Assembly: GCF_001194135.2 (NCBI RefSeq)
Contig: NC_068993.1
Span: 34,114,300-34,149,417 of the forward strand
Source: Octopus bimaculoides
Taxonomy: Eukaryota
Direction of reading: 5' to 3'
DNA: 35,118 nt
Numbering within the stretch: the first letter of the stretch is position 1; every line of letters starts with the position of its first letter. The translations under genes were made by a program, and so were the position numbers. Shown piece after piece: positions 2,790-20,460 of the stretch. The notes below the pieces were generated by a model. That model was not told where the DNA came from and did not search any database. It worked only from the letters and a program-made list of their open reading frames with translations.

Positions 2790-3000
2790 TCTTACTCTTT
2801 TCTCTCCTTTACTTGTTTCAGTCATTTGACTGTAGTCATACTGGGCAACGCCTTTAGTCGAGCAAATCGACCCCAAGACTTATTCTTTGGAAGCCTAGTA
2901 CTTATTCTATCGGGGACGTAAACACACCAGCATCGGTTGTCAAGTGATGCTTGGGGGACAAACACAGACACACAAACATATACACACACAAACATACACA
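2790..3000 (-). mobile_element. SINE family A, 3' half, truncated by assembly gap
   Basis: TTTACTTGTTTCAGTCATTTGACTG...TTTAGTCGAGCAAATCGACCCC...AGCCTAGTACTTATTCT...CACACCAGCATCGGTTGTCAAG is collinear with 945-1150 and with the reverse complement of 28480-28669. Confidence 0.85.
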
Positions 3001-3872
3001 NNNNNNNNNNNNNNNNNNNNNNNNNNNNNNNNNNNNNNNNNNNNNNNNNNNNNNNNNNNNNNNNNNNNNNNNNNNNNNNNNNNNNNNNNNNNNNNNNNNN
3101 NNNNNNNNNNNNNNNNNNNNNNNNNNNNNNNNNNNNNNNNNNNNNNNNNNNNNNNNNNNNNNNNNNNNNNNNNNNNNNNNNNNNNNNNNNNNNNNNNNNN
3201 NNNNNNNNNNNNNNNNNNNNNNNNNNNNNNNNNNNNNNNNNNNNNNNNNNNNNNNNNNNNNNNNNNNNNNNNNNNNNNNNNNNNNNNNNNNNNNNNNNNN
3301 NNNNNNNNNNNNNNNNNNNNNNNNNNNNNNNNNNNNNNNNNNNNNNNNNNNNNNNNNNNNNNNNNNNNNNNNNNNNNNNNNNNNNNNNNNNNNNNNNNNN
3401 NNNNNNNNNNNNNNNNNNNNNNNNNNNNNNNNNNNNNNNNNNNNNNNNNNNNNNNNNNNNNNNNNNNNNNNNNNNNNNNNNNNNNNNNNNNNNNNNNNNN
3501 NNNNNNNNNNNNNNNNNNNNNNNNNNNNNNNNNNNNNNNNNNNNNNNNNNNNNNNNNNNNNNNNNNNNNNNNNNNNNNNNNNNNNNNNNNNNNNNNNNNN
3601 NNNNNNNNNNNNNNNNNNNNNNNNNNNNNNNNNNNNNNNNNNNNNNNNNNNNNNNNNNNNNNNNNNNNNNNNNNNNNNNNNNNNNNNNNNNNNNNNNNNN
3701 NNNNNNNNNNNNNNNNNNNNNNNNNNNNNNNNNNNNNNNNNNNNNNNNNNNNNNNNNNNNNNNNNNNNNNNNNNNNNNNNNNNNNNNNNNNNNNNNNNNN
3801 NNNNNNNNNNNNNNNNNNNNNNNNNNNNNNNNNNNNNNNNNNNNNNNNNNNNNNNNNNNNNNNNNNNNNNNN
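3001..3872. other. Assembly gap (N run); other gaps at 2744-2753, 16451-16536, 21421-21503, 31729-31738, 32245-32451, 33468-33477
   Basis: Runs of N, most flanked by microsatellites, typical of short-read scaffolds. Confidence 1.
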
Positions 3873-4178
3873 CAGGAAACCCCAAAATGGCTGAAGTCCA
3901 AAAGATAGTGCTCATGGGAACTGCCCATATCCTACGTAAAATACTGTCTATGTGATCTCAAATTTTAAAGCAAACATAATTTTCTTATGGTTTCTTAAAC
4001 ATTCACTTGAACAAAACTGTACAAATCCAAATATATGGTACCCTAGGCATAACACCTACATGAACTTCTAACTTGTTGTCTCTTGAGGTCTCTGGGTGAG
4101 ACTTGGATCCAACTTGTACAAATGCAAAACAAAAGTCAAACATAAAATAATAATAATAATATTAATAATAATAATAAT
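3873..4178 (+). mobile_element. R4/Dong-type LINE 3' end (ORF C-terminus, 3' UTR, (TAA)n)
   Basis: GNPKMAEVQKIVLMGTAHILRKILSM* (stop 3953-3955) matches the R4/Dong RLE C-terminal QK..L.GTAHILR..L motif. UTR runs into an imperfect (TAA)n at about 4145-4178. Confidence 0.8.
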
Positions 4179-5108
4179 CTACAGTTTTCGAACACACAAA
4201 CGATCAGCTTTAAGAACTTTAATATCTACAACTTCTGTGAATATCTATCCTTTCCTTTCTGCCTGAGTATTCGAAAATGTGAACAGTCTCTTTATTCTAA
4301 GAACACTACAGTTTTCTCTGTTCCGACAAACAGAATATCATCTCTAGTAAATGTTAAAACTTTAATATCTACAATTTTGTGTGAAAATTTTATCTTTCTT
4401 TTTTCCCTGACAACCTGAATATGTAAACATGCCTTTTATTGTAACAACACAATTAAATGCACAATAAAAATCAAAAAAAAAATTAAGGTGGTAACAATTG
4501 TAAAGACTGTAAACCACAGCAAAACTTATAAAAAGAAAATAAAAGTTTCAAAGGAAAAAAAGAAAAAAAGAAATTCAGAAATTCAAAAATTCGACGGGGT
4601 GAATATCAGCATATATATGTATATATATATATATAATAATAATAATAATTTTTTCTCTCAGTAATTAAAAATAGAACAAGTTGAATTGGTTCTTTTCAAG
4701 GCCAAGGTCAACGCTCTCATTGAATGCTAGTAGTAGTAAACACATTTGATCTCTGCTGACTCCAAGGGTGTGAGGCCGCTTTTGTCTCCTTATCGCACAA
4801 GTATTGCCCATTGCTGATCTCTTCGCCATCTGCTGAATCTATCTACAGACCTGTGGAATTTAATCTACTCACTATGCTGTCTCGCTTGCTACTACTTTCG
4901 CCTTAAGCACTCACATATTTATGATCATGTGAAGTGCAAGACAAAAGTTGAAACTAAACAACATACAATAATACCTTTTAATAATAAATAGAAATGATAA
5001 TGATGGTAATAATGATAATAACAATAGTTTAGCCAGAACTCATGTCGGATCGGAGGAAATATTAACAATGACAAATAGTAGTAGAAAAATGGAAACAATA
5101 ATATCAGT

Positions 5109-5121
5109 GATGATGATGATG

Positions 5122-5180
<59 letters not shown>
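5109..5180. repeat. (GAT)n(AAT)n microsatellite
   Basis: Direct observation. Confidence 0.95.
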
Positions 5181-5181
<1 letters not shown>

Positions 5182-5418
5182 TAGCGGCGAAAGAATTTGA
5201 CAAGATCAGTAAATATAAAGACTTGCTAATAGAAATTGAAAAAATGTGGCACCTCAAGGCGACTACCATACCAGTGATTGTAGGATCTCTAGGAATGATA
5301 AAAAAAAAGGTACTGAAATCTATTTGAAATGATACCAGGCTTACCATCTCTACAGGAGGTGCAAAAAATCGTGCTAACTGGAACGACTCATGTACTAAGA
5401 AGAGCATTATCGCTGTGA
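5181..5418 (+). mobile_element. 5'-truncated R4/Dong-type LINE fragment (RLE C-terminus)
   Basis: IAAKEFDKISKYKDLLIEIEKMWHLKATTIPVIVGSLGMIKK..(frameshift/stop)..IPGLPSLQEVQKIVLTGTTHVLRRALSL* matches the KE.EK..KY.DL..EI..MW...PVIIGALG...QK..L.GT..ILR motif series. Confidence 0.85.
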
Positions 5419-5420
5419 AA

Positions 5421-5910
5421 TATGAGGAGAAGTCGTTTTTACTTTCAGGAAAATGTTATGTGATAAACTCATTGACGCCGGGTTGAAAATCGTAACGGAA
5501 AATTTTCCAGAAATTCCAATACAACCAACCATTTTTTCTCACACAGAATTTCTAACATACAATCCACACTGCACACTGTTTATTCACCACACCAGGAACA
5601 ATCATTTTGTTTTGTCAACCAATTTTCTCGGAGATGTTTATATTTATGACAGTTTGAACTTACCAGCTTCGCAGGAACTAATGGCACAAATAACAGCATT
5701 GTATTCACCACAAACAAACATTATTCCTACAATTCAACAAGTTCATATAATTAATCCCCAAGTTGGCGCATATGATTGTGGCCTTTTCGCCCTGGCATAT
5801 GCATATGAACTGGTCATTGGAAACGCTCCAGAGAAGTTTCTATTTGATCAGTCAAAAATTGCGAGCACATTTAAGATTTTGCCTCGAAAACAATAAATTT
5901 GTTCCTTTCC
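5421..5910 (+). pseudogene. Ulp1/SENP-like (clan CE, C48) cysteine protease domain at the PLE N-terminus
   Basis: L.SG.ML.D..ID, then NHF (His codon 5603-5605), YDSL (Asp 5648-5650), Q-x5-C in NPQVGAYDCGLFALA (Gln 5759-5761, Cys 5777-5779). FDQSK/LRAHLRFCLENNKFVPFP continues after removing one A from the run at 5854-5858. Confidence 0.8.
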
Positions 5911-8658
5911 CGAAAGTAAAGGTTTTTCAAATGTCTACAAAAACCACAGAAGTCATTCACTTACTATCACCCACCCAGAAATGGATTACCCCTAGAAAGA
6001 TGACTAAAAATTATAACTTCTTACATGAACATTCACAACAAATTTTATCACCCAATAGGTTCCGCGTTTTAAGTGAATATTTCCAGCAAAGCCCAAAAAG
6101 TAGTCAGGAATCTAATGAAAAAAAGACTCTGAAAACCACTTGCCCAAGAAAAAACATCGCATTAGAGAATAACTCGGTCATAAATTTATCTAAACTAAAA
6201 CTTTCGCCCGACAATGTCTCAGTCTTAGAGCTTGGACTGAGTTTTTGACCAAGCACTAAGAATTTCGACAAGGATGAACTGACTCAAGGGCTATTCCAGT
6301 TTGTCCGCCGCCACAAGCTGAAAGAATATTTTTTTGACAAAAAGCTGGTAACGAGGTGTCCGAAAACCCTATGTTACTAAAAATGATGATGATCGAATCT
6401 GGCATAATTGGATTGAAAAGTATCTCAATTAGCATCCAGATAAAGTTCGGGGTGGACGTTCACAAGCACTACTGGAATTTCTTGAATCTTGCCAGGAAGG
6501 CATTAGAGGAAGCCTTAAATCAAGTGGAAAGAAGTCCTGGAATAACCTCACAAATTCCCAACGTTACGCACTCCGACGTCTAGTTAATAACGATTCTATT
6601 GTTATTAAGATGGCGGATAAGGGAGGCGCTATCGTCATTATAGACAAAAGTGAGTATATTTCGGCTTGTGAAGAAGTTTTAAATGACAAAACTTCATATG
6701 AAGAATTACCTGTCGACCCAAACCCCAATTACAGAGAGGAACTTGACAAAATAATTCTGGAAAAGGAGGAAAACAATTTCGTTAATAAGGCTGAATCTAA
6801 GATTCTAAGGTCAGAAAGAAGAACACCTGTATTTTATGGTCTCCCTAGAATACACAAAATGTTCGAAAGATTTCCTCCAATGCGCCCAATTTGCAGTGGA
6901 TATGAATGTTGCACGGCCAAAATTTCGGAATGACTGGATGGCTTTCAACTCCCAGTTGCAAAAGGATCAAGTTCCTATATTTGGGATACCTTTGCTTTTG
7001 TATCTAAAATCAACAACTTTTTTAAGCGCTGAGGCCGTATTGAGAACTGTCTTTTGGTAACCATGGATGTTTCTTCCTTATATCCCAATATTGACTACAA
7101 TGAAGGGGTAGAAGCATGCATGGATGCCTTCGAAAACCGGTAAAACAAAAGTAGTCCATCAAATTCACTCTGTAGATTATTGAAGTTTTTGTTAGAAAGT
7201 AACACAATGAAGTTTAGACAAATATTTTACCACCAGACGAAGGGTTGCGCCATGGGTAACCCCATGGCAGTTAATTTCGCTAATGTCTTCATGACGAAAT
7301 TCGAGACACAGTTACTGAAGATATTCAAATCTCTTCATGGTCATGAGCCAATACTCTGGTTACGGTTCATTGACGACGTAGTTTTTCGTCTGGGATGGAT
7401 CACAGGATAGTTTAATGGACTTCTTGAATTTCTGTGACTGTTATGCAAGAAACTATGGCTTTAAATACAACATAAAATTTACGTCTAGTTTTTCAAAACT
7501 AGCGTTGAATGTTTGGACACAAAAGTCAAGTTTTCTGGAGGCAGAATAGTGACAAAGTTATTTTGCAAGCCCACGTCATCCCACATTTATCTCCACCACC
7601 GCTCCAATCATCTACATCATCTTATTAGGTCAAATCCGAAAACCCAATTTTTTGAGGATAAAACGGATTTGTACTGACATAGGGGATTACTGGAAATATG
7701 CAAATGCTTTTGTATGTCATTATGTCAAACGCGGTTACAGTGAATCACGATTAAAGGAAATAGCAAATGAAATAGCTAAGATTAGCAAAGATAGTCAAAC
7801 CTACACGCATAATTTTAGCAAACACAATACAATAGATGACAGAATTCCTTTAGTGATTATCTGGCACCGACATTTCGCTGGCATTTCAAAAGTGTTGCAT
7901 GAAAGTTACCAGCATGTGGCGAAAAATATCCTCGTTTCAAACAGATATTTCTTCAGCAGCCTATTGTATCCTTTAGACAGAATAAGAAAACGAACATTGG
8001 AGTATCTGCACGCTGTACCTTAAAGAACAGCCGCAAGAGAGGTAAGTCCTGTTCATTGTGCAACAACATAAGTGAAGTGAATTCCATCAGAAATCCTAAC
8101 AGGAATGTTATGATTTATACAGAAGGTGGAACTTGTACGCTGCCGAATGCACGAAACACAACTGAATTTATGTTGGCTGTAGAACAGAACAATTAAACGA
8201 AAGGTTTAATGGGCACAGATTCGACGTCAGGCATAATAACAGTAGTTCGACAGAACTTGCTGAACATTTCGTTTCAAGCGGGTGCAATTTTGAAGAAGAC
8301 TTGAAAGTACATATTCTCAGAAAATATTCTGAATCTGCTCCACTTTCACTTCTCAGAATGTATGAGGAGTAATATGTTTGCGGTTGTTAACATCACGCCC
8401 TGGAGGAATGAATAAGATGACAGGAGACTATCATCAAATTTATACAAAACTGTTTGATTAAATATTTTTCTTTCTCTCTTTTTCTTTCCTTTTTTTTCTG
8501 TCATCTTTTTTCTATTTTTATGTCTTTTTCTTTCGCCTGTTATAAAATTGTAACTTAAAAACTGATGATGTCATTCCATGAATGTTTGGACGCTGGCTGC
8601 TCTCGTTCATACTTTACGTTTAAACTTCTGTAATTTTGAATTTTTATCACTCCTTATT

Positions 8659-8701
8659 TTGAACTTGACAAAGACAGACGTACTGTTGAAATATCGTTCA
8701 A
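8659..8701 (+). ncRNA. Minimal type I hammerhead ribozyme motif (U3:A8 variant) in the PLE 3' region
   Basis: Stem I TTGAAC (8659-8664)/GTTCAA (8696-8701); core TTGACAA(A); stem II GACAG-ACGTA-CTGTT; GAA-A; palindromic ATAT mini stem III; predicted cleavage after C8695 (AUC). Confidence 0.7.
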
Positions 8702-8787
8702 CTAATAAAATATCTTACAATCGAATCGCGCTCTTCGTCTTGACTGTTTACCTTCGTGAAGTGTTACGTCAATCCTTTTTAAAATAT

Positions 8788-8793
8788 TCTTCT

Positions 8794-8840
<47 letters not shown>

Positions 8841-8863
8841 TTCTTCTTCTTCTTCTTCTTCTT

Positions 8864-8893
<30 letters not shown>
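8788..8893. repeat. (TTC)n microsatellite between the PLE 3' end and a Dong 3' end
   Basis: Direct observation. Confidence 0.95.
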
Positions 8894-10089
<1,196 letters not shown>

Positions 10090-19388: not shown

Positions 19389-20460
19389 ATATGTTCGCCG
19401 ATTTACTGCCAATTCAAAGGTTCTCCATTCTATTATTCGTGACCTCCTTTATGCAGTTGACTGTGACTTAGTCACTCATACAGTGGATGACATGCAAATA
19501 CTCATGAATTGCATTTCTGCTTCTTGCAAGGCATTTGGACTCAGCATTAGCGTGGACAAGACCGTTGTAATGTTCCAGCCTGCACCAGAAAATCCATATG
19601 TGGAACCAGTTATCTTGGTCGAAGGAACAATTCTGAAGGTAGTAGACAAGTTTGTCTACCTGGGCAGCACACTCAGCCGTTCTTGCTCCCTGGAAGAGGA
19701 AATAACTTTCAGGTTGCAGAGAGCAACTAATTCCTTTCAGTCTCGTGTAAGGTCCCAGCATGGCATCGCAAGGCAAACAAAAGTTGCTGTGTACCGTGCA
19801 TGTGTACTGACATCGCTCCTCTACTCATGTGAGACATTGGCTCTGTACAAACGTCAGGCAAGGGTTCTTGAATGCTTTCATCAGAGATGTCTCAGACACA
19901 TTCTTAATGTTGGCTGGACCTCAAAAATTCCAGACACACAGGTGCTGAGGCCAGCTGATATCTTCAGTATTGAGGCAATGGTGCACAAGCACCGGTTACG
20001 TTGGACTGGACACCTTATTAGAATGAAGGATAGCAGGATTCCTAAGCAGATGCTCTATGGAGAACTTGTGAATGGAAGGAGACTCCGGCAGAAACGAAGG
20101 CTGCGATTTAAGGACTGTGTCAAGTCCTCATTAAAGGCCTATGATATGCAGGACACTGACTGGGAGAACAATGCCTCTCATCGCCACAGATGGAGGAAGC
20201 ATGTTAAGGAGGGGATCGACACTTTTGAGAGAGCACGTACCCAGCATGAAGAACTTAAGCGAGCTGCGTGAAAGCGCACGGCTCGTATAGTAAATGGGAA
20301 AAGCTTGGTCTGCAATGTTTGCAGTCGTGTATGCTTGTGAAGAGCAGGGCTCATTAGCCACCAACGGAGTCGCAAATGCAAAATATAAGTTAGACCTAGA
20401 GCGCACAATGTTCCTGAAGGTCGGCAATGGTCTTCCTCGGTCACGAGTGGACAGCCATCA
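19389..20460 (+). mobile_element. 5'-truncated RTE (BovB-like) LINE 3' portion with C2H2 finger and 3' UTR
   Basis: IRDLLYAVDCDLVTHT (YADD motif mutated), FGLSISVDKTVVM.QP, VDKFVYLGSTLS, LLYSCET, RLRWTGHLIRM.DSRIPKQMLYGEL..G.R, RLRFKD, then CNVCSRVC..RAGLISHQR after a TGA at 20269-20271. Ends GGACAGCCATCA before (TGTA)n. Confidence 0.9.

What the first reader, a model, noticed from the sequence alone, without database searches (positions are those of the whole stretch)
5421..8461. Penelope-like retroelement carrying an in-frame N-terminal Ulp1/SENP-like (SUMO/ubiquitin-like) protease
Seen: a domain with H(5603)-D(5648)-Q-x5-C(5759/5777), the residue order and QxxxxDCG context of clan CE Ulp1/SENP proteases. 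Removing one A at 5854-5858 gives FDQSKLRAHLRFCLE, and that frame stays open for about 129 codons into the PLE N-terminal motif VINLS.LKLS...SVLELGLSF, followed by RT and GIY-YIG. Known: canonical PLEs encode only RT plus GIY-YIG, while Ulp1-like domains are described in MULE, Ginger1, Zisupton and NeSL elements. I do not know of a described PLE family with this fusion, but cannot check the literature. Inference: an ancestral protease-RT-endonuclease polyprotein that could counter SUMO-dependent transposon silencing or process itself.
Basis: partly seen in the sequence, partly recalled or inferred. Interest (0 to 1): 0.85.

Follow-up and report, generated by a model that had tools for sequence, protein, structure and literature searches.

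The report
Penelope-like retroelement with built-in SENP-like protease
The window holds a dead, front-truncated copy of a Penelope-like retrotransposon from a lineage whose single protein also contains a SUMO/ubiquitin-protease-like domain; I found no paper describing this domain combination, and the copy in the window is only a fossil.

Summary
Window 5453-5896 encodes a domain with His (5603), Asp (5648), Gln (5759) and Cys (5777). A 1-nt insertion at about 5855-5860 breaks the frame. The repaired frame runs on into the PLE motif VINLSKLK...VLELGLSF, then RT, then GIY-YIG, to the natural stop at 8459-8461.

This is not chance nesting. The window is collinear from 5427 to 8455 with intact 1,220-1,370-aa database ORFs ordered leader/2A-like NPGP, FLxxC..PKGL motif, coiled coil, protease, RT, GIY-YIG. 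A 90%-identical fragment (P0001) reads straight through the junction.

The domain belongs to clan CE and is closest to Ulp1/SENP. An AlphaFold model (pLDDT 93.7) matches SENP5/2/1/3 and Ulp1 best. A 40-sequence profile hits SENP1 (E=6e-6) with the catalytic residues aligned. 31 of 40 family members touch Pfam Peptidase_C48.

The window copy is 5'-truncated (about 245 aa missing). It carries eight or nine frameshifts and 8 stop codons.

Eight literature searches found no description of this architecture. The nearest precedents are Ulp1-like domains in NeSL/Utopia and a Josephin-like motif in one Chlamys PLE. Repbase and Dfam could not be checked. Biochemical function is untested. I rate it a new variant of a known kind, of moderate interest.

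The parts
5400..5452 (+). 5' end of the truncated PLE copy. EKSFLLSG (5427-5450) is the conserved segment just before the protease. The boundary with the upstream LINE-like tail is uncertain by about 25 bp.
   Evidence: The frame-aware alignment to P0265 starts at 5427, equal to P0265 aa 227. DNA homology to L003 starts at about 5401. The upstream LINE-like ORF tail runs 5211-5415.
5453..5921 (+). Clan CE Ulp1/SENP-like cysteine protease domain, about 156 aa. Catalytic His 5603-5605, Asp 5648-5650, oxyanion Gln 5759-5761, Cys 5777-5779. It is split by a frameshift.
   Evidence: Searches give the coordinates. H, D, Q and C are invariant in 40 homologues. SENP1 hit with aligned catalytic residues. 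Foldseek top hits are SENP and Ulp1.
5854..5860 (+). 1-nt insertion (A-run/ATTG) that shifts the protease C-terminus into the next frame.
   Evidence: L003 and P0001 lack the extra base.
5922..6176 (+). Low-complexity linker with the family-conserved motifs KWITPRK (5979-5999) and NRFRVL (6054-6071).
6177..6340 (+). PLE N-terminal conserved motifs VINLSKLKLSPDNVSVLELGLSF*PS and FVRRHKLKEYF, with a stop at 6246.
   Evidence: The same motifs occur in the protease-less PLE P0272.
6373..7990 (+). PLE reverse transcriptase with DKG motif (6610-6642), core motifs and thumb. Frameshifts at about 6375, 7381, 7496, 7648 and 7928. Stops at 6430, 6931, 7030 and 7141.
   Evidence: Pfam RVT_1 E=1.5e-4. tblastn to P0007/P0265 at 40-44% id. 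Lesion catalogue.
8044..8067 (+). Remnant of the Zn-finger-like linker (KSCSLCNN) upstream of the endonuclease.
   Evidence: Intact CX2-5CxxC is seen in L001 (PCNHQSCLLC), P0082 and P0270.
8133..8458 (+). C-terminal GIY-YIG endonuclease and the end of the ORF. Frameshifts at about 8083 and 8379. Stops at 8097, 8163 and 8370.
   Evidence: Pfam GIY-YIG E=1.9e-3. Alignment to P0265 reaches its last residue.
8459..8461 (+). Natural stop codon of the PLE ORF (TAA).
8462..8788 (+). 3' UTR of the element.
   Evidence: Window 8715-8803 is conserved (81%), in inverted orientation, upstream of the L003/L004 copies.
8789..8893 (+). (CTT)n microsatellite abutting the 3' end, the likely insertion target.
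   Evidence: The L003 copy abuts (ATT)n instead. Microsatellite insertion bias of PLEs is reported in PMC8557442.

Best explanation
Window ~5400-8790 is a dead, 5'-truncated insertion of a canonical (C-terminal GIY-YIG) Penelope-like element. It belongs to a lineage whose single ORF has acquired an integral clan-CE, Ulp1/SENP-like cysteine protease domain.

In intact relatives the ORF order is: short conserved leader with a hydrophobic stretch and a 2A-like D(V/I)ExNPGP motif; FLxxC..PKGL motif; coiled coil; protease (about aa 225-400); low-complexity linker; NLS..LELGLSF and FxRRLKLKEYF motifs; DKG/RT/thumb; (in some) a CX2-5CxxC linker; GIY-YIG.

Shown: the architecture, its conservation across ORFs only 30-47% identical to each other, invariance of the His/Asp/Gln/Cys catalytic residues, and the SENP-like fold.

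Inferred: the domain is an active peptidase or isopeptidase. Its most likely role (about 50% of my belief) is removal of SUMO, ubiquitin or another ubiquitin-like modifier from host or element proteins. That would protect the retrotransposition complex from modifier-dependent silencing or degradation. Cis-processing of the polyprotein is the main alternative.

The window copy can do none of this. It lacks the first ~245 aa and has eight or nine frameshifts (the 5' most, at about 5451, is the least certain) and 8 in-frame stops.
For: Collinearity: seven tblastn segments run from 5456 to 8455, covering P0265 aa 237-1245 (P0007 aa 246-1260 to 8458). The frame-aware alignment gives 430/987 identities, from 5427 to the last codon.

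Junction: P0001 is 90% identical over the whole repaired 264 aa and uninterrupted.

Intact fusions: P0007, P0023, P0024 and P0082 each have the protease at about aa 225-480 plus Pfam RVT_1 and GIY-YIG. P0264-P0267 and P0270 add precomputed PF00078/PF01541 hits. These are continuous ORFs on 4-5 kb contigs, with multi-member 90% clusters that include several intact copies.

PLE hallmarks in relatives: L001 has a 4,292-bp tandem repeat plus an inverted partial copy. L003 has an inverted 3' end upstream of a truncated copy.

Clan CE: Foldseek on a pLDDT 93.7 model gives SENP5 (TMq 0.71), SENP2/1/3 and Ulp1, then bacterial CE DUBs, adenain and NEDP1; ranks 1-47 are all clan CE. The 40-sequence HMM hits SENP1 at E=5.8e-6, aligning HW/YDS/Q..DCG. 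Peptidase_C48 is touched by 31/40 members at E<=0.1 (best 1.9e-7). UniRef names the O. bimaculoides fragment P0002 'Ubiquitin-like protease family profile domain-containing protein'.

Single main acquisition: 25 of 28 PLE-linked domains fall in one NJ clade free of PHD-linked relatives.
Against: The window's own domain scores below Pfam's C48 threshold (E=0.032, 14.5 vs 20.7 bits). It found nothing in PDB as a single sequence.

All intact full-length ORFs come from unlabelled ENA/Logan assemblies, so their host taxa are unknown. No intact full-length copy is shown for an octopus.

No hammerhead ribozyme was detected in the window or in L001.

PLE clade was not placed by RT phylogeny.

The residue after the catalytic His is Phe, not the Trp of SENPs, in most PLE copies. 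Substrate specificity is therefore open.

No biochemical evidence exists for activity or substrate.

P0082 falls outside the main PLE protease clade in a weak NJ tree.

The window and L003 share nearly the same 5' homology limit, which simple independent 5' truncation does not explain.
Confidence: 0.85

Rival explanations
1. Chance nesting or chimera. The protease belongs to a different transposon or a host SENP-like gene and merely lies next to a 5'-truncated PLE, so the repaired frame is a coincidence.
For: The window copy is broken exactly between the protease and the PLE motifs (frameshift ~5855). The same protease family also occurs outside PLEs as stand-alone protease+PHD ORFs.
Against: P0001 (90% id) and about 20 intact ORFs read continuously through protease, linker, RT and GIY-YIG. 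The linker motifs are conserved at 39% identity. PLE-linked proteases form their own clade.
Confidence: 0.02
2. The protease is a polyprotein-processing enzyme, as in adenovirus adenain or ASFV pS273R (also clan CE). It would cut the PLE ORF product into N-terminal and RT-EN pieces rather than act on ubiquitin-like modifiers.
For: Adenain and pS273R are among the structural hits. The domain sits between two modules separated by long low-complexity linkers with conserved short motifs that could be cleavage sites. A processing role is one long-standing idea for the Ulp1-like domain of NeSL-type elements (my recollection, not checked in a paper here).
Against: The closest sequence and fold matches are SENP/Ulp1, not viral processing proteases. 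No conserved Gly-Gly-X site was seen in the linkers. The only invariant GG is the universal PLE DKGG motif. The element already uses a 2A-like motif for one co-translational separation.
Confidence: 0.25
3. The protease works together with the 2A-like leader. 2A-induced ribosome pausing attracts ubiquitin-dependent quality control, and a downstream deubiquitinase-type domain rescues the nascent protein or ribosome.
For: Every full-length protease-PLE ORF examined carries D(V/I)ExNPGP upstream. A 2026 preprint (PMC13405545) reports 2A-like peptides with Josephin/OTU DUB domains in non-LTR ORF2 proteins, and cites rescue of 2A-linked protein loss by a viral OTU DUB.
Against: This rests purely on correlation. 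I did not test whether protease-less PLEs also have 2A. The protease is translated after the 2A site, so it could act only in trans on later rounds.
Confidence: 0.1
4. The domain is a YopJ-like acetyltransferase, another clan CE activity that uses the same triad, rather than a protease.
For: Weak Pfam Acetyltransf_14 hits for P0004 (E=0.0033) and 5/40 members. PopP2 and AvrA appear among the lower-ranked fold matches.
Against: C48 hits are far more frequent (31/40) and stronger. SENP TM-scores are 0.64-0.71 against about 0.43 for PopP2. The domain is about 160 aa, and Foldseek aligns it to only a small part of the ~330-residue PopP2 chains (TMt ~0.22). From my own knowledge of YopJ enzymes, it has no room for their regulatory IP6/AcCoA-binding subdomain.
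Confidence: 0.04

Closest known systems
Canonical C-terminal-EN+ Penelope-like elements (Neptune, Nematis, Penelope/Poseidon; Arkhipova 2006; Craig et al. 2021, PMC8557442)
   Same: [quoted passage not shown] Also 5' truncation, tandem/inverted pseudo-LTR arrangements (L001, L003) and a 3' end at microsatellites. The CX2-5CxxC linker typical of Neptune/Nematis is present in L001, P0082 and P0270 and as a remnant in the window.
   Different: A ~160-aa clan CE protease is inserted in the N-terminal region, and a 2A-like leader is present. No hammerhead ribozyme was detected. The CX2-5CxxC linker is absent in most of the main protease-PLE clade. Clade was not placed by phylogeny.
NeSL-1 and Utopia-1_TSP non-LTR retrotransposons with an N-terminal Ulp1-like protease (PMC4640811)
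   Same: A retrotransposon ORF that fuses an Ulp1-like cysteine protease upstream of the RT. The function of the protease is unknown there too.
   Different: These are a different retroelement class: restriction-like endonuclease, non-LTR RT, nematode hosts, site-specific targets. Acquisition was evidently independent.
Chlamys-1_cBra, a PLE of Chara braunii with a Josephin-like motif (PMC8557442)
   Same: The only accessory ubiquitin-pathway cysteine-protease-like domain in a PLE that I found in the literature.
   Different: It has a Josephin fold (not clan CE), a C-terminal extension, an N-terminal-EN Chlamys clade and a green-lineage host. The authors themselves describe the homology as weak.
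Cellular SENP/Ulp1 SUMO proteases (Pfam Peptidase_C48; PDB 9gnx, 2io1, 2iyc, 1euv)
   Same: Fold (TMq 0.64-0.71), order and context of His, Asp, Gln and Cys, and the N-terminal L.D..I helix aligned to SENP1.
   Different: Only about 15% identity. The domain is shorter (~160 vs ~220 aa) with trimmed loops, and His-Phe replaces His-Trp in most PLE copies. It is embedded in a transposon ORF.
Ulp1/C48 domains of DNA transposons
   Same: Recurrent capture of a clan CE protease by mobile elements. The PLE domain's nearest non-PLE relatives are small protease+PHD ORFs, at least one of which is flanked by inverted repeats.
   Different: These have a different transposition machinery. No direct sequence comparison with those named families was possible here.

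Membership tests
Penelope-like elements (canonical, C-terminal EN+) | RT and GIY-YIG endonuclease in one ORF, with GIY-YIG C-terminal | tested here: met
   Window: RVT_1 E=1.5e-4 and GIY-YIG E=1.9e-3 in the right order. It is collinear with intact ORFs that pass Pfam thresholds for both.
Penelope-like elements (canonical, C-terminal EN+) | PLE N-terminal conserved motifs, including DKG, upstream of the RT | tested here: met
   VINLS..VLELGLSF 6177-6245, FVRRHKLKEYF 6300-6332 and ADKGG 6610-6642. They are shared with the protease-less PLE P0272.
Penelope-like elements (canonical, C-terminal EN+) | Pseudo-LTR / tandem or inverted partial copies and frequent 5' truncation | tested here: met
   L001 has a direct repeat at 4,292-bp spacing (97-100% id) and an inverted 244-nt arm. 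L003 has an inverted 3' end upstream. The window copy lacks about 245 N-terminal aa.
Penelope-like elements (canonical, C-terminal EN+) | Hammerhead ribozyme motif in the pLTR | tested here: not met
   No Rfam hammerhead in the window at gathering threshold, in L001 at E<=1, or in window 8300-9000 at E<=5. This is not a universal PLE feature, and minimal HHRs can escape these models.
Penelope-like elements (canonical, C-terminal EN+) | RT groups with PLE/TERT in phylogeny | not tested
Neptune / Nematis clades of PLEs | CX2-5CxxC Zn-finger-like linker upstream of GIY-YIG | tested here: inconclusive
   Present in L001 (CNHQSCLLC), P0082 and P0270. The window has a decayed remnant (KSCSLC, 8044-8067). 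It is absent in P0009, P0020, P0264-P0267 and the P0265 cluster. No RT phylogeny was made.
Clan CE, family C48 (Ulp1/SENP) peptidases | Catalytic His, Asp, (Gln), Cys in that order, with the Q.....C / DCG context | tested here: met
   H51, D66, Q103 and C109 are invariant in 40 homologues. They align to SENP1 HW / YDS / QQMNGSDCG.
Clan CE, family C48 (Ulp1/SENP) peptidases | Significant profile match to Peptidase_C48 | tested here: inconclusive
   The window domain scores E=0.032, below the gathering score. 31/40 members score E<=0.1, best 1.9e-7, and some pass the 20.7-bit cut-off (P0046 49 bits, P0039 29 bits). A PROSITE-based UniRef name exists for P0002.
Clan CE, family C48 (Ulp1/SENP) peptidases | Adenain/Ulp1-like fold | tested here: met
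   For the pLDDT 93.7 model, Foldseek ranks 1-47 are all clan CE, with SENP5 at E=6.6e-6 and TMq 0.71.
Clan CE, family C48 (Ulp1/SENP) peptidases | Cleaves after the C-terminal Gly-Gly of SUMO or another ubiquitin-like protein | not testable with these tools
   Needs enzymology.
2A / StopGo recoding peptides (in full-length relatives, not in the window) | C-terminal D(V/I)ExNPG|P motif in frame | tested here: met
   E, N, P, G and P are invariant in the 7-ORF alignment. The motif is present in 13/13 N-terminally complete ORFs, P0001 and L001. Skipping activity was not tested.
NeSL/Utopia non-LTR retrotransposons | Restriction-like endonuclease C-terminal to a non-LTR RT | tested here: not met
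   The endonuclease here is GIY-YIG. This is analogous, not a member.

The most novel reading that the evidence does not exclude
A widespread and probably still active lineage of Penelope-like elements in marine invertebrates carries a three-part N-terminal module: StopGo/2A leader, coiled coil and SENP-like isopeptidase. The protease strips SUMO or ubiquitin from host silencing or quality-control factors, or from the element's own RNP. That would make it a retrotransposon-encoded counter-defence enzyme in animals, mechanistically coupled to 2A recoding.
Probability: 0.15. Interest if true: 0.8.

Novelty: new variant of a known kind. Interest (0 to 1): 0.55.

Why it matters
PLEs are usually described as RT plus GIY-YIG only. 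A conserved, catalytically intact SENP-like domain inside many divergent PLE ORFs adds another case of mobile elements capturing clan CE proteases; others are NeSL/Utopia, Crypton and, by recollection, MULE, Ginger and Zisupton.

The role of those domains has never been established experimentally. The intact 1.2-1.4-kaa ORFs found here offer compact substrates for testing whether such proteases deconjugate SUMO or ubiquitin, or process the element's polyprotein.

The invariant 2A-like leader upstream is a second feature I did not find reported for PLEs. It also matters for annotation: 5'-truncated PLE consensus sequences will miss both features, and gene predictors split them into 'ubiquitin-like protease' orphan genes such as the O. 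bimaculoides entry.

Tried and rejected
Steps that led nowhere:
- Single-sequence Pfam scans of the window domain and of P0001-P0004 gave no C48 hit. The one hit was a weak, below-threshold YopJ match (Acetyltransf_14, E=0.0033) for P0004. A single-sequence PDB phmmer search and a 5-sequence profile gave nothing useful. A 40-sequence profile was needed.
- Rfam searches for hammerhead ribozymes in the window and L001 were negative.
- An exact look-up of the window's 147-aa ORF found no record, so the source organism was not identified.
- Taxon identification of the full-length ORFs failed. Cluster look-ups gave no names, and run/assembly accessions are in no searchable paper.
- The word-indexed search with the N-terminal profile A4 returned only 12 proteins and no names.
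- Craig et al. 2021 has no supplementary text held, so no reference PLE sequences were available for an RT tree.
- The Pfam family PF28514 (DUF8422) listed for relatives is not in the local Pfam copy. From which fragments carry it, it appears to cover the PLE N-terminal motifs rather than the protease. This is an inference.

Ideas considered and rejected:
- Chance nesting was rejected; see the rivals.
- The LINE-like tail at 5211-5415 as part of the element was rejected. L003 lacks it.
Full report
**1. What is in the window.**

ORF 5453-5896 (147 aa) reads MLCDKLIDAG...HHTRNNHF...YIYDSLN...QVGAYDCGLFA...FDQSK. His51, Asp66, Gln103 and Cys109 lie exactly at 5603, 5648, 5759 and 5777.

After FDQSK the frame breaks. 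The next frame (ORF 5763-6248) continues KLRAHLRFCLENNKFVPFPKVK. It then passes through a low-complexity linker with KWITPRK and NRFRVL, into VINLSKLKLSPDNVSVLELGLSF, and ends at a TGA at 6246.

A 78%-identical DNA copy (L003) and the protein P0001 show that the lesion is a single inserted base, most simply ATG to ATTG at 5859/5860.

Downstream come ADKGG (6610), FYGLPRIHK (6832), VTMDVSSLYPNIDY (7057), RFIDDV (7360), a thumb region, KSCSLCNN (8044), the GIY-YIG block LYAAEC..IYVG..NERFNGHR (8133-8219), and the ORF's natural stop at 8459-8461.

A frame-aware alignment to the intact relative P0265 runs from window 5427 to 8455, equal to P0265 aa 227-1245, with 430/987 identities. It lists frameshifts near 5855, 6375, 7381, 7496, 7648, 7928, 8083 and 8379, plus a less certain one near 5451. 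Stops fall at 6246, 6430, 6931, 7030, 7141, 8097, 8163 and 8370.

The copy is therefore 5'-truncated, missing about 245 aa, and long dead. No second copy exists in the window. The 3' UTR runs to about 8788 and abuts a (CTT)n array at 8789-8893.

**2. Is the protease part of the element?**

Yes. P0001 is 90% identical over all 264 repaired residues and reads straight through the junction.

P0003 and P0004, at only 39% identity, have the same protease-linker-NLS..LELGLSF order.

The genomic locus of P0003 (L001) is a nearly full-length element. It carries leader/2A-like motif, FLTNCQKENFIPNGL, coiled coil, protease, linker, N-terminal PLE motifs, DKG, RT, PCNHQSCLLC and GIY-YIG. It sits in a 4,292-bp tandem repeat with an additional inverted partial copy, the classic PLE pseudo-LTR arrangement.

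An exhaustive profile search found 5,958 relatives of the protease domain. Among the best are continuous ORFs of 1,187-1,461 aa with the domain at about aa 225-480. Pfam finds RVT_1 and/or GIY-YIG in them. Their sequences show the same module order. A second search added P0264-P0267 and P0270.

Several belong to 90% clusters with multiple intact and truncated members on 4-5 kb contigs. This suggests recently active families.

The protease-less PLE P0272 has the same FL..C..IPKGL and NLS..GL.F motifs. The protease is therefore an insertion into the variable N-terminal region, not an N-terminal add-on.

In an NJ tree of 204 domains, 25 of 28 PLE-linked domains form one clade without PHD-linked relatives. 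This is weak evidence, based on a 160-aa domain and a distance method.

**3. What is the domain?**

Single-sequence searches failed. Deeper ones did not.

With 40 homologues, His, Asp, Gln and the DCG cysteine are invariant. The profile hits SENP1 at E=5.8e-6 over positions 4-147. HW, YDS and Q..G.DCG.FA align to SENP1's catalytic His, Asp, Gln and Cys.

31/40 members match Pfam Peptidase_C48 at E<=0.1, the best at 1.9e-7. The window's own domain reaches only E=0.032.

An AlphaFold model built on this alignment has pLDDT 93.7 and pTM 0.89. Its Foldseek matches are SENP5 (E=6.6e-6, TMq 0.71), SENP2, SENP1, SENP3 and Ulp1, followed by OtDUB, SseL, XopD, adenain, NEDP1 and SnCE1. Ranks 1-47 are all clan CE. 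A shallower model gave the same family list.

UniRef already labels the O. bimaculoides fragment P0002 as a 'Ubiquitin-like protease family profile domain-containing protein'.

The domain is shorter than cellular SENPs. In most PLE copies it has Phe rather than Trp after the catalytic His, so I leave its substrate open.

**4. How it probably works.**

Shown: an intact catalytic set is conserved across ORFs that share only 30-47% identity. This argues for selection on catalysis.

Inferred: the enzyme acts as a ubiquitin-like-modifier peptidase or isopeptidase serving the element. I favour deconjugation of SUMO or ubiquitin-type marks at about 50%. Cis-processing of the polyprotein stands at about 25%. 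A link to 2A-induced ribosome stalling stands at about 10%, suggested by the DUB/2A co-occurrence in non-LTR elements in PMC13405545. A YopJ-like acetyltransferase activity is unlikely.

None of this can be decided in silico. The window copy itself is non-functional.

**5. Comparison with what is known.**

Craig et al. 2021 describe canonical PLEs as RT plus C-terminal GIY-YIG. They list accessory PHD, SAP, gag-like and a weak Josephin-like motif in Chlamys elements, but no clan CE domain.

Ulp1-like domains are documented in NeSL and Utopia-1_TSP and in Cryptons.

Six of the eight full-text searches targeted Penelope or PLE together with Ulp1, C48, SUMO protease, peptidase or cysteine protease. 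They found no description of this fusion. The 2A search and the two 2A papers I read do not mention PLEs. The eighth search looked for the sample accessions. Repbase, Dfam and subscription literature could not be checked.

I therefore file this as a new variant of a known kind, with the caveat that it may already sit unremarked in a repeat library.

**6. Open points.**

- The host taxa of the intact ORFs are unknown.
- The PLE clade is not assigned. The CX2-5CxxC linker is present in some members and absent in others.
- No hammerhead ribozyme was found.
- The window and L003 share nearly the same 5' homology limit (~5401), even though L003 lacks the upstream LINE-like tail. This is unexplained.

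Noticed in passing
Relatives only: P0007 aa 55-66, P0265 aa 55-66, P0001 aa 9-19, L001 ~5540-5575. Absent from the window.: Every N-terminally complete protease-PLE ORF has a canonical 2A/StopGo-like D(V/I)ExNPGP motif. It follows a conserved MDDL..YR.RIG.F start and a hydrophobic stretch. I found no report of 2A-like sequences in PLEs.
   Followed up: partly
L005 8001-8678 (Dendronephthya gigantea GCA_004324835.1); also P0157 (Paralvinella palmiformis) and about 2,600 database proteins: The nearest non-PLE relatives of the protease are stand-alone ORFs of about 220-300 aa with protease plus a C-terminal PHD finger. The D. gigantea one is flanked by GC-rich inverted repeats (7542-7646 / 8933-9084), so it may be a small TIR element.
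   Followed up: partly
P0110, P0132, P0150, P0151 (database proteins): Four divergent polycystin-like channel proteins (PKD_channel, PLAT) end in a copy of this protease domain, one of them with a PHD finger as well. This could be a real host fusion or domestication, or a recurrent gene-model chimera.
   Followed up: no
P0091 (727 aa): The protease domain is followed by a YqaJ-like / viral alkaline exonuclease domain, which hints at yet another mobile-element context for this protease family.
   Followed up: no
L003/L004 1-1035 versus window 5401-5942, 6446-6698 and 8715-8803: This short related copy (78-84% id) has an internal ~500-bp deletion. It is preceded by the element's 3' end in inverted orientation and by (ATT)n. 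It shares the window copy's 5' homology limit, which independent 5' truncation would not predict.
   Followed up: partly
window 5211-5415 (+), 3875-3952 (+), 9099-9350 (-), about 26293-26712: These are tails of an abundant LINE-like ORF (KYKDL.IEI.KMW..., GTAHILRK.LS, PDIVV..C.IIDLACP). One copy ends directly at the PLE's truncated 5' end.
   Followed up: partly
window 19483-20271 (+): An open 262-aa ORF resembles the C-terminal part of a non-LTR (LINE) ORF2. It looks like another 5'-truncated retrotransposon.
   Followed up: no
window about 3000-3880, about 32240-32470 and short runs near 31700 and 33480: Runs of N (assembly gaps) are flanked by (CA)n/(GT)n-type simple repeats. The window is a draft-quality, repeat-rich eukaryotic region.
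   Followed up: no
window 5100-5180 and 8789-8893: Long (ATA)n and (CTT)n microsatellites. The (CTT)n array abuts the PLE 3' end.
   Followed up: partly
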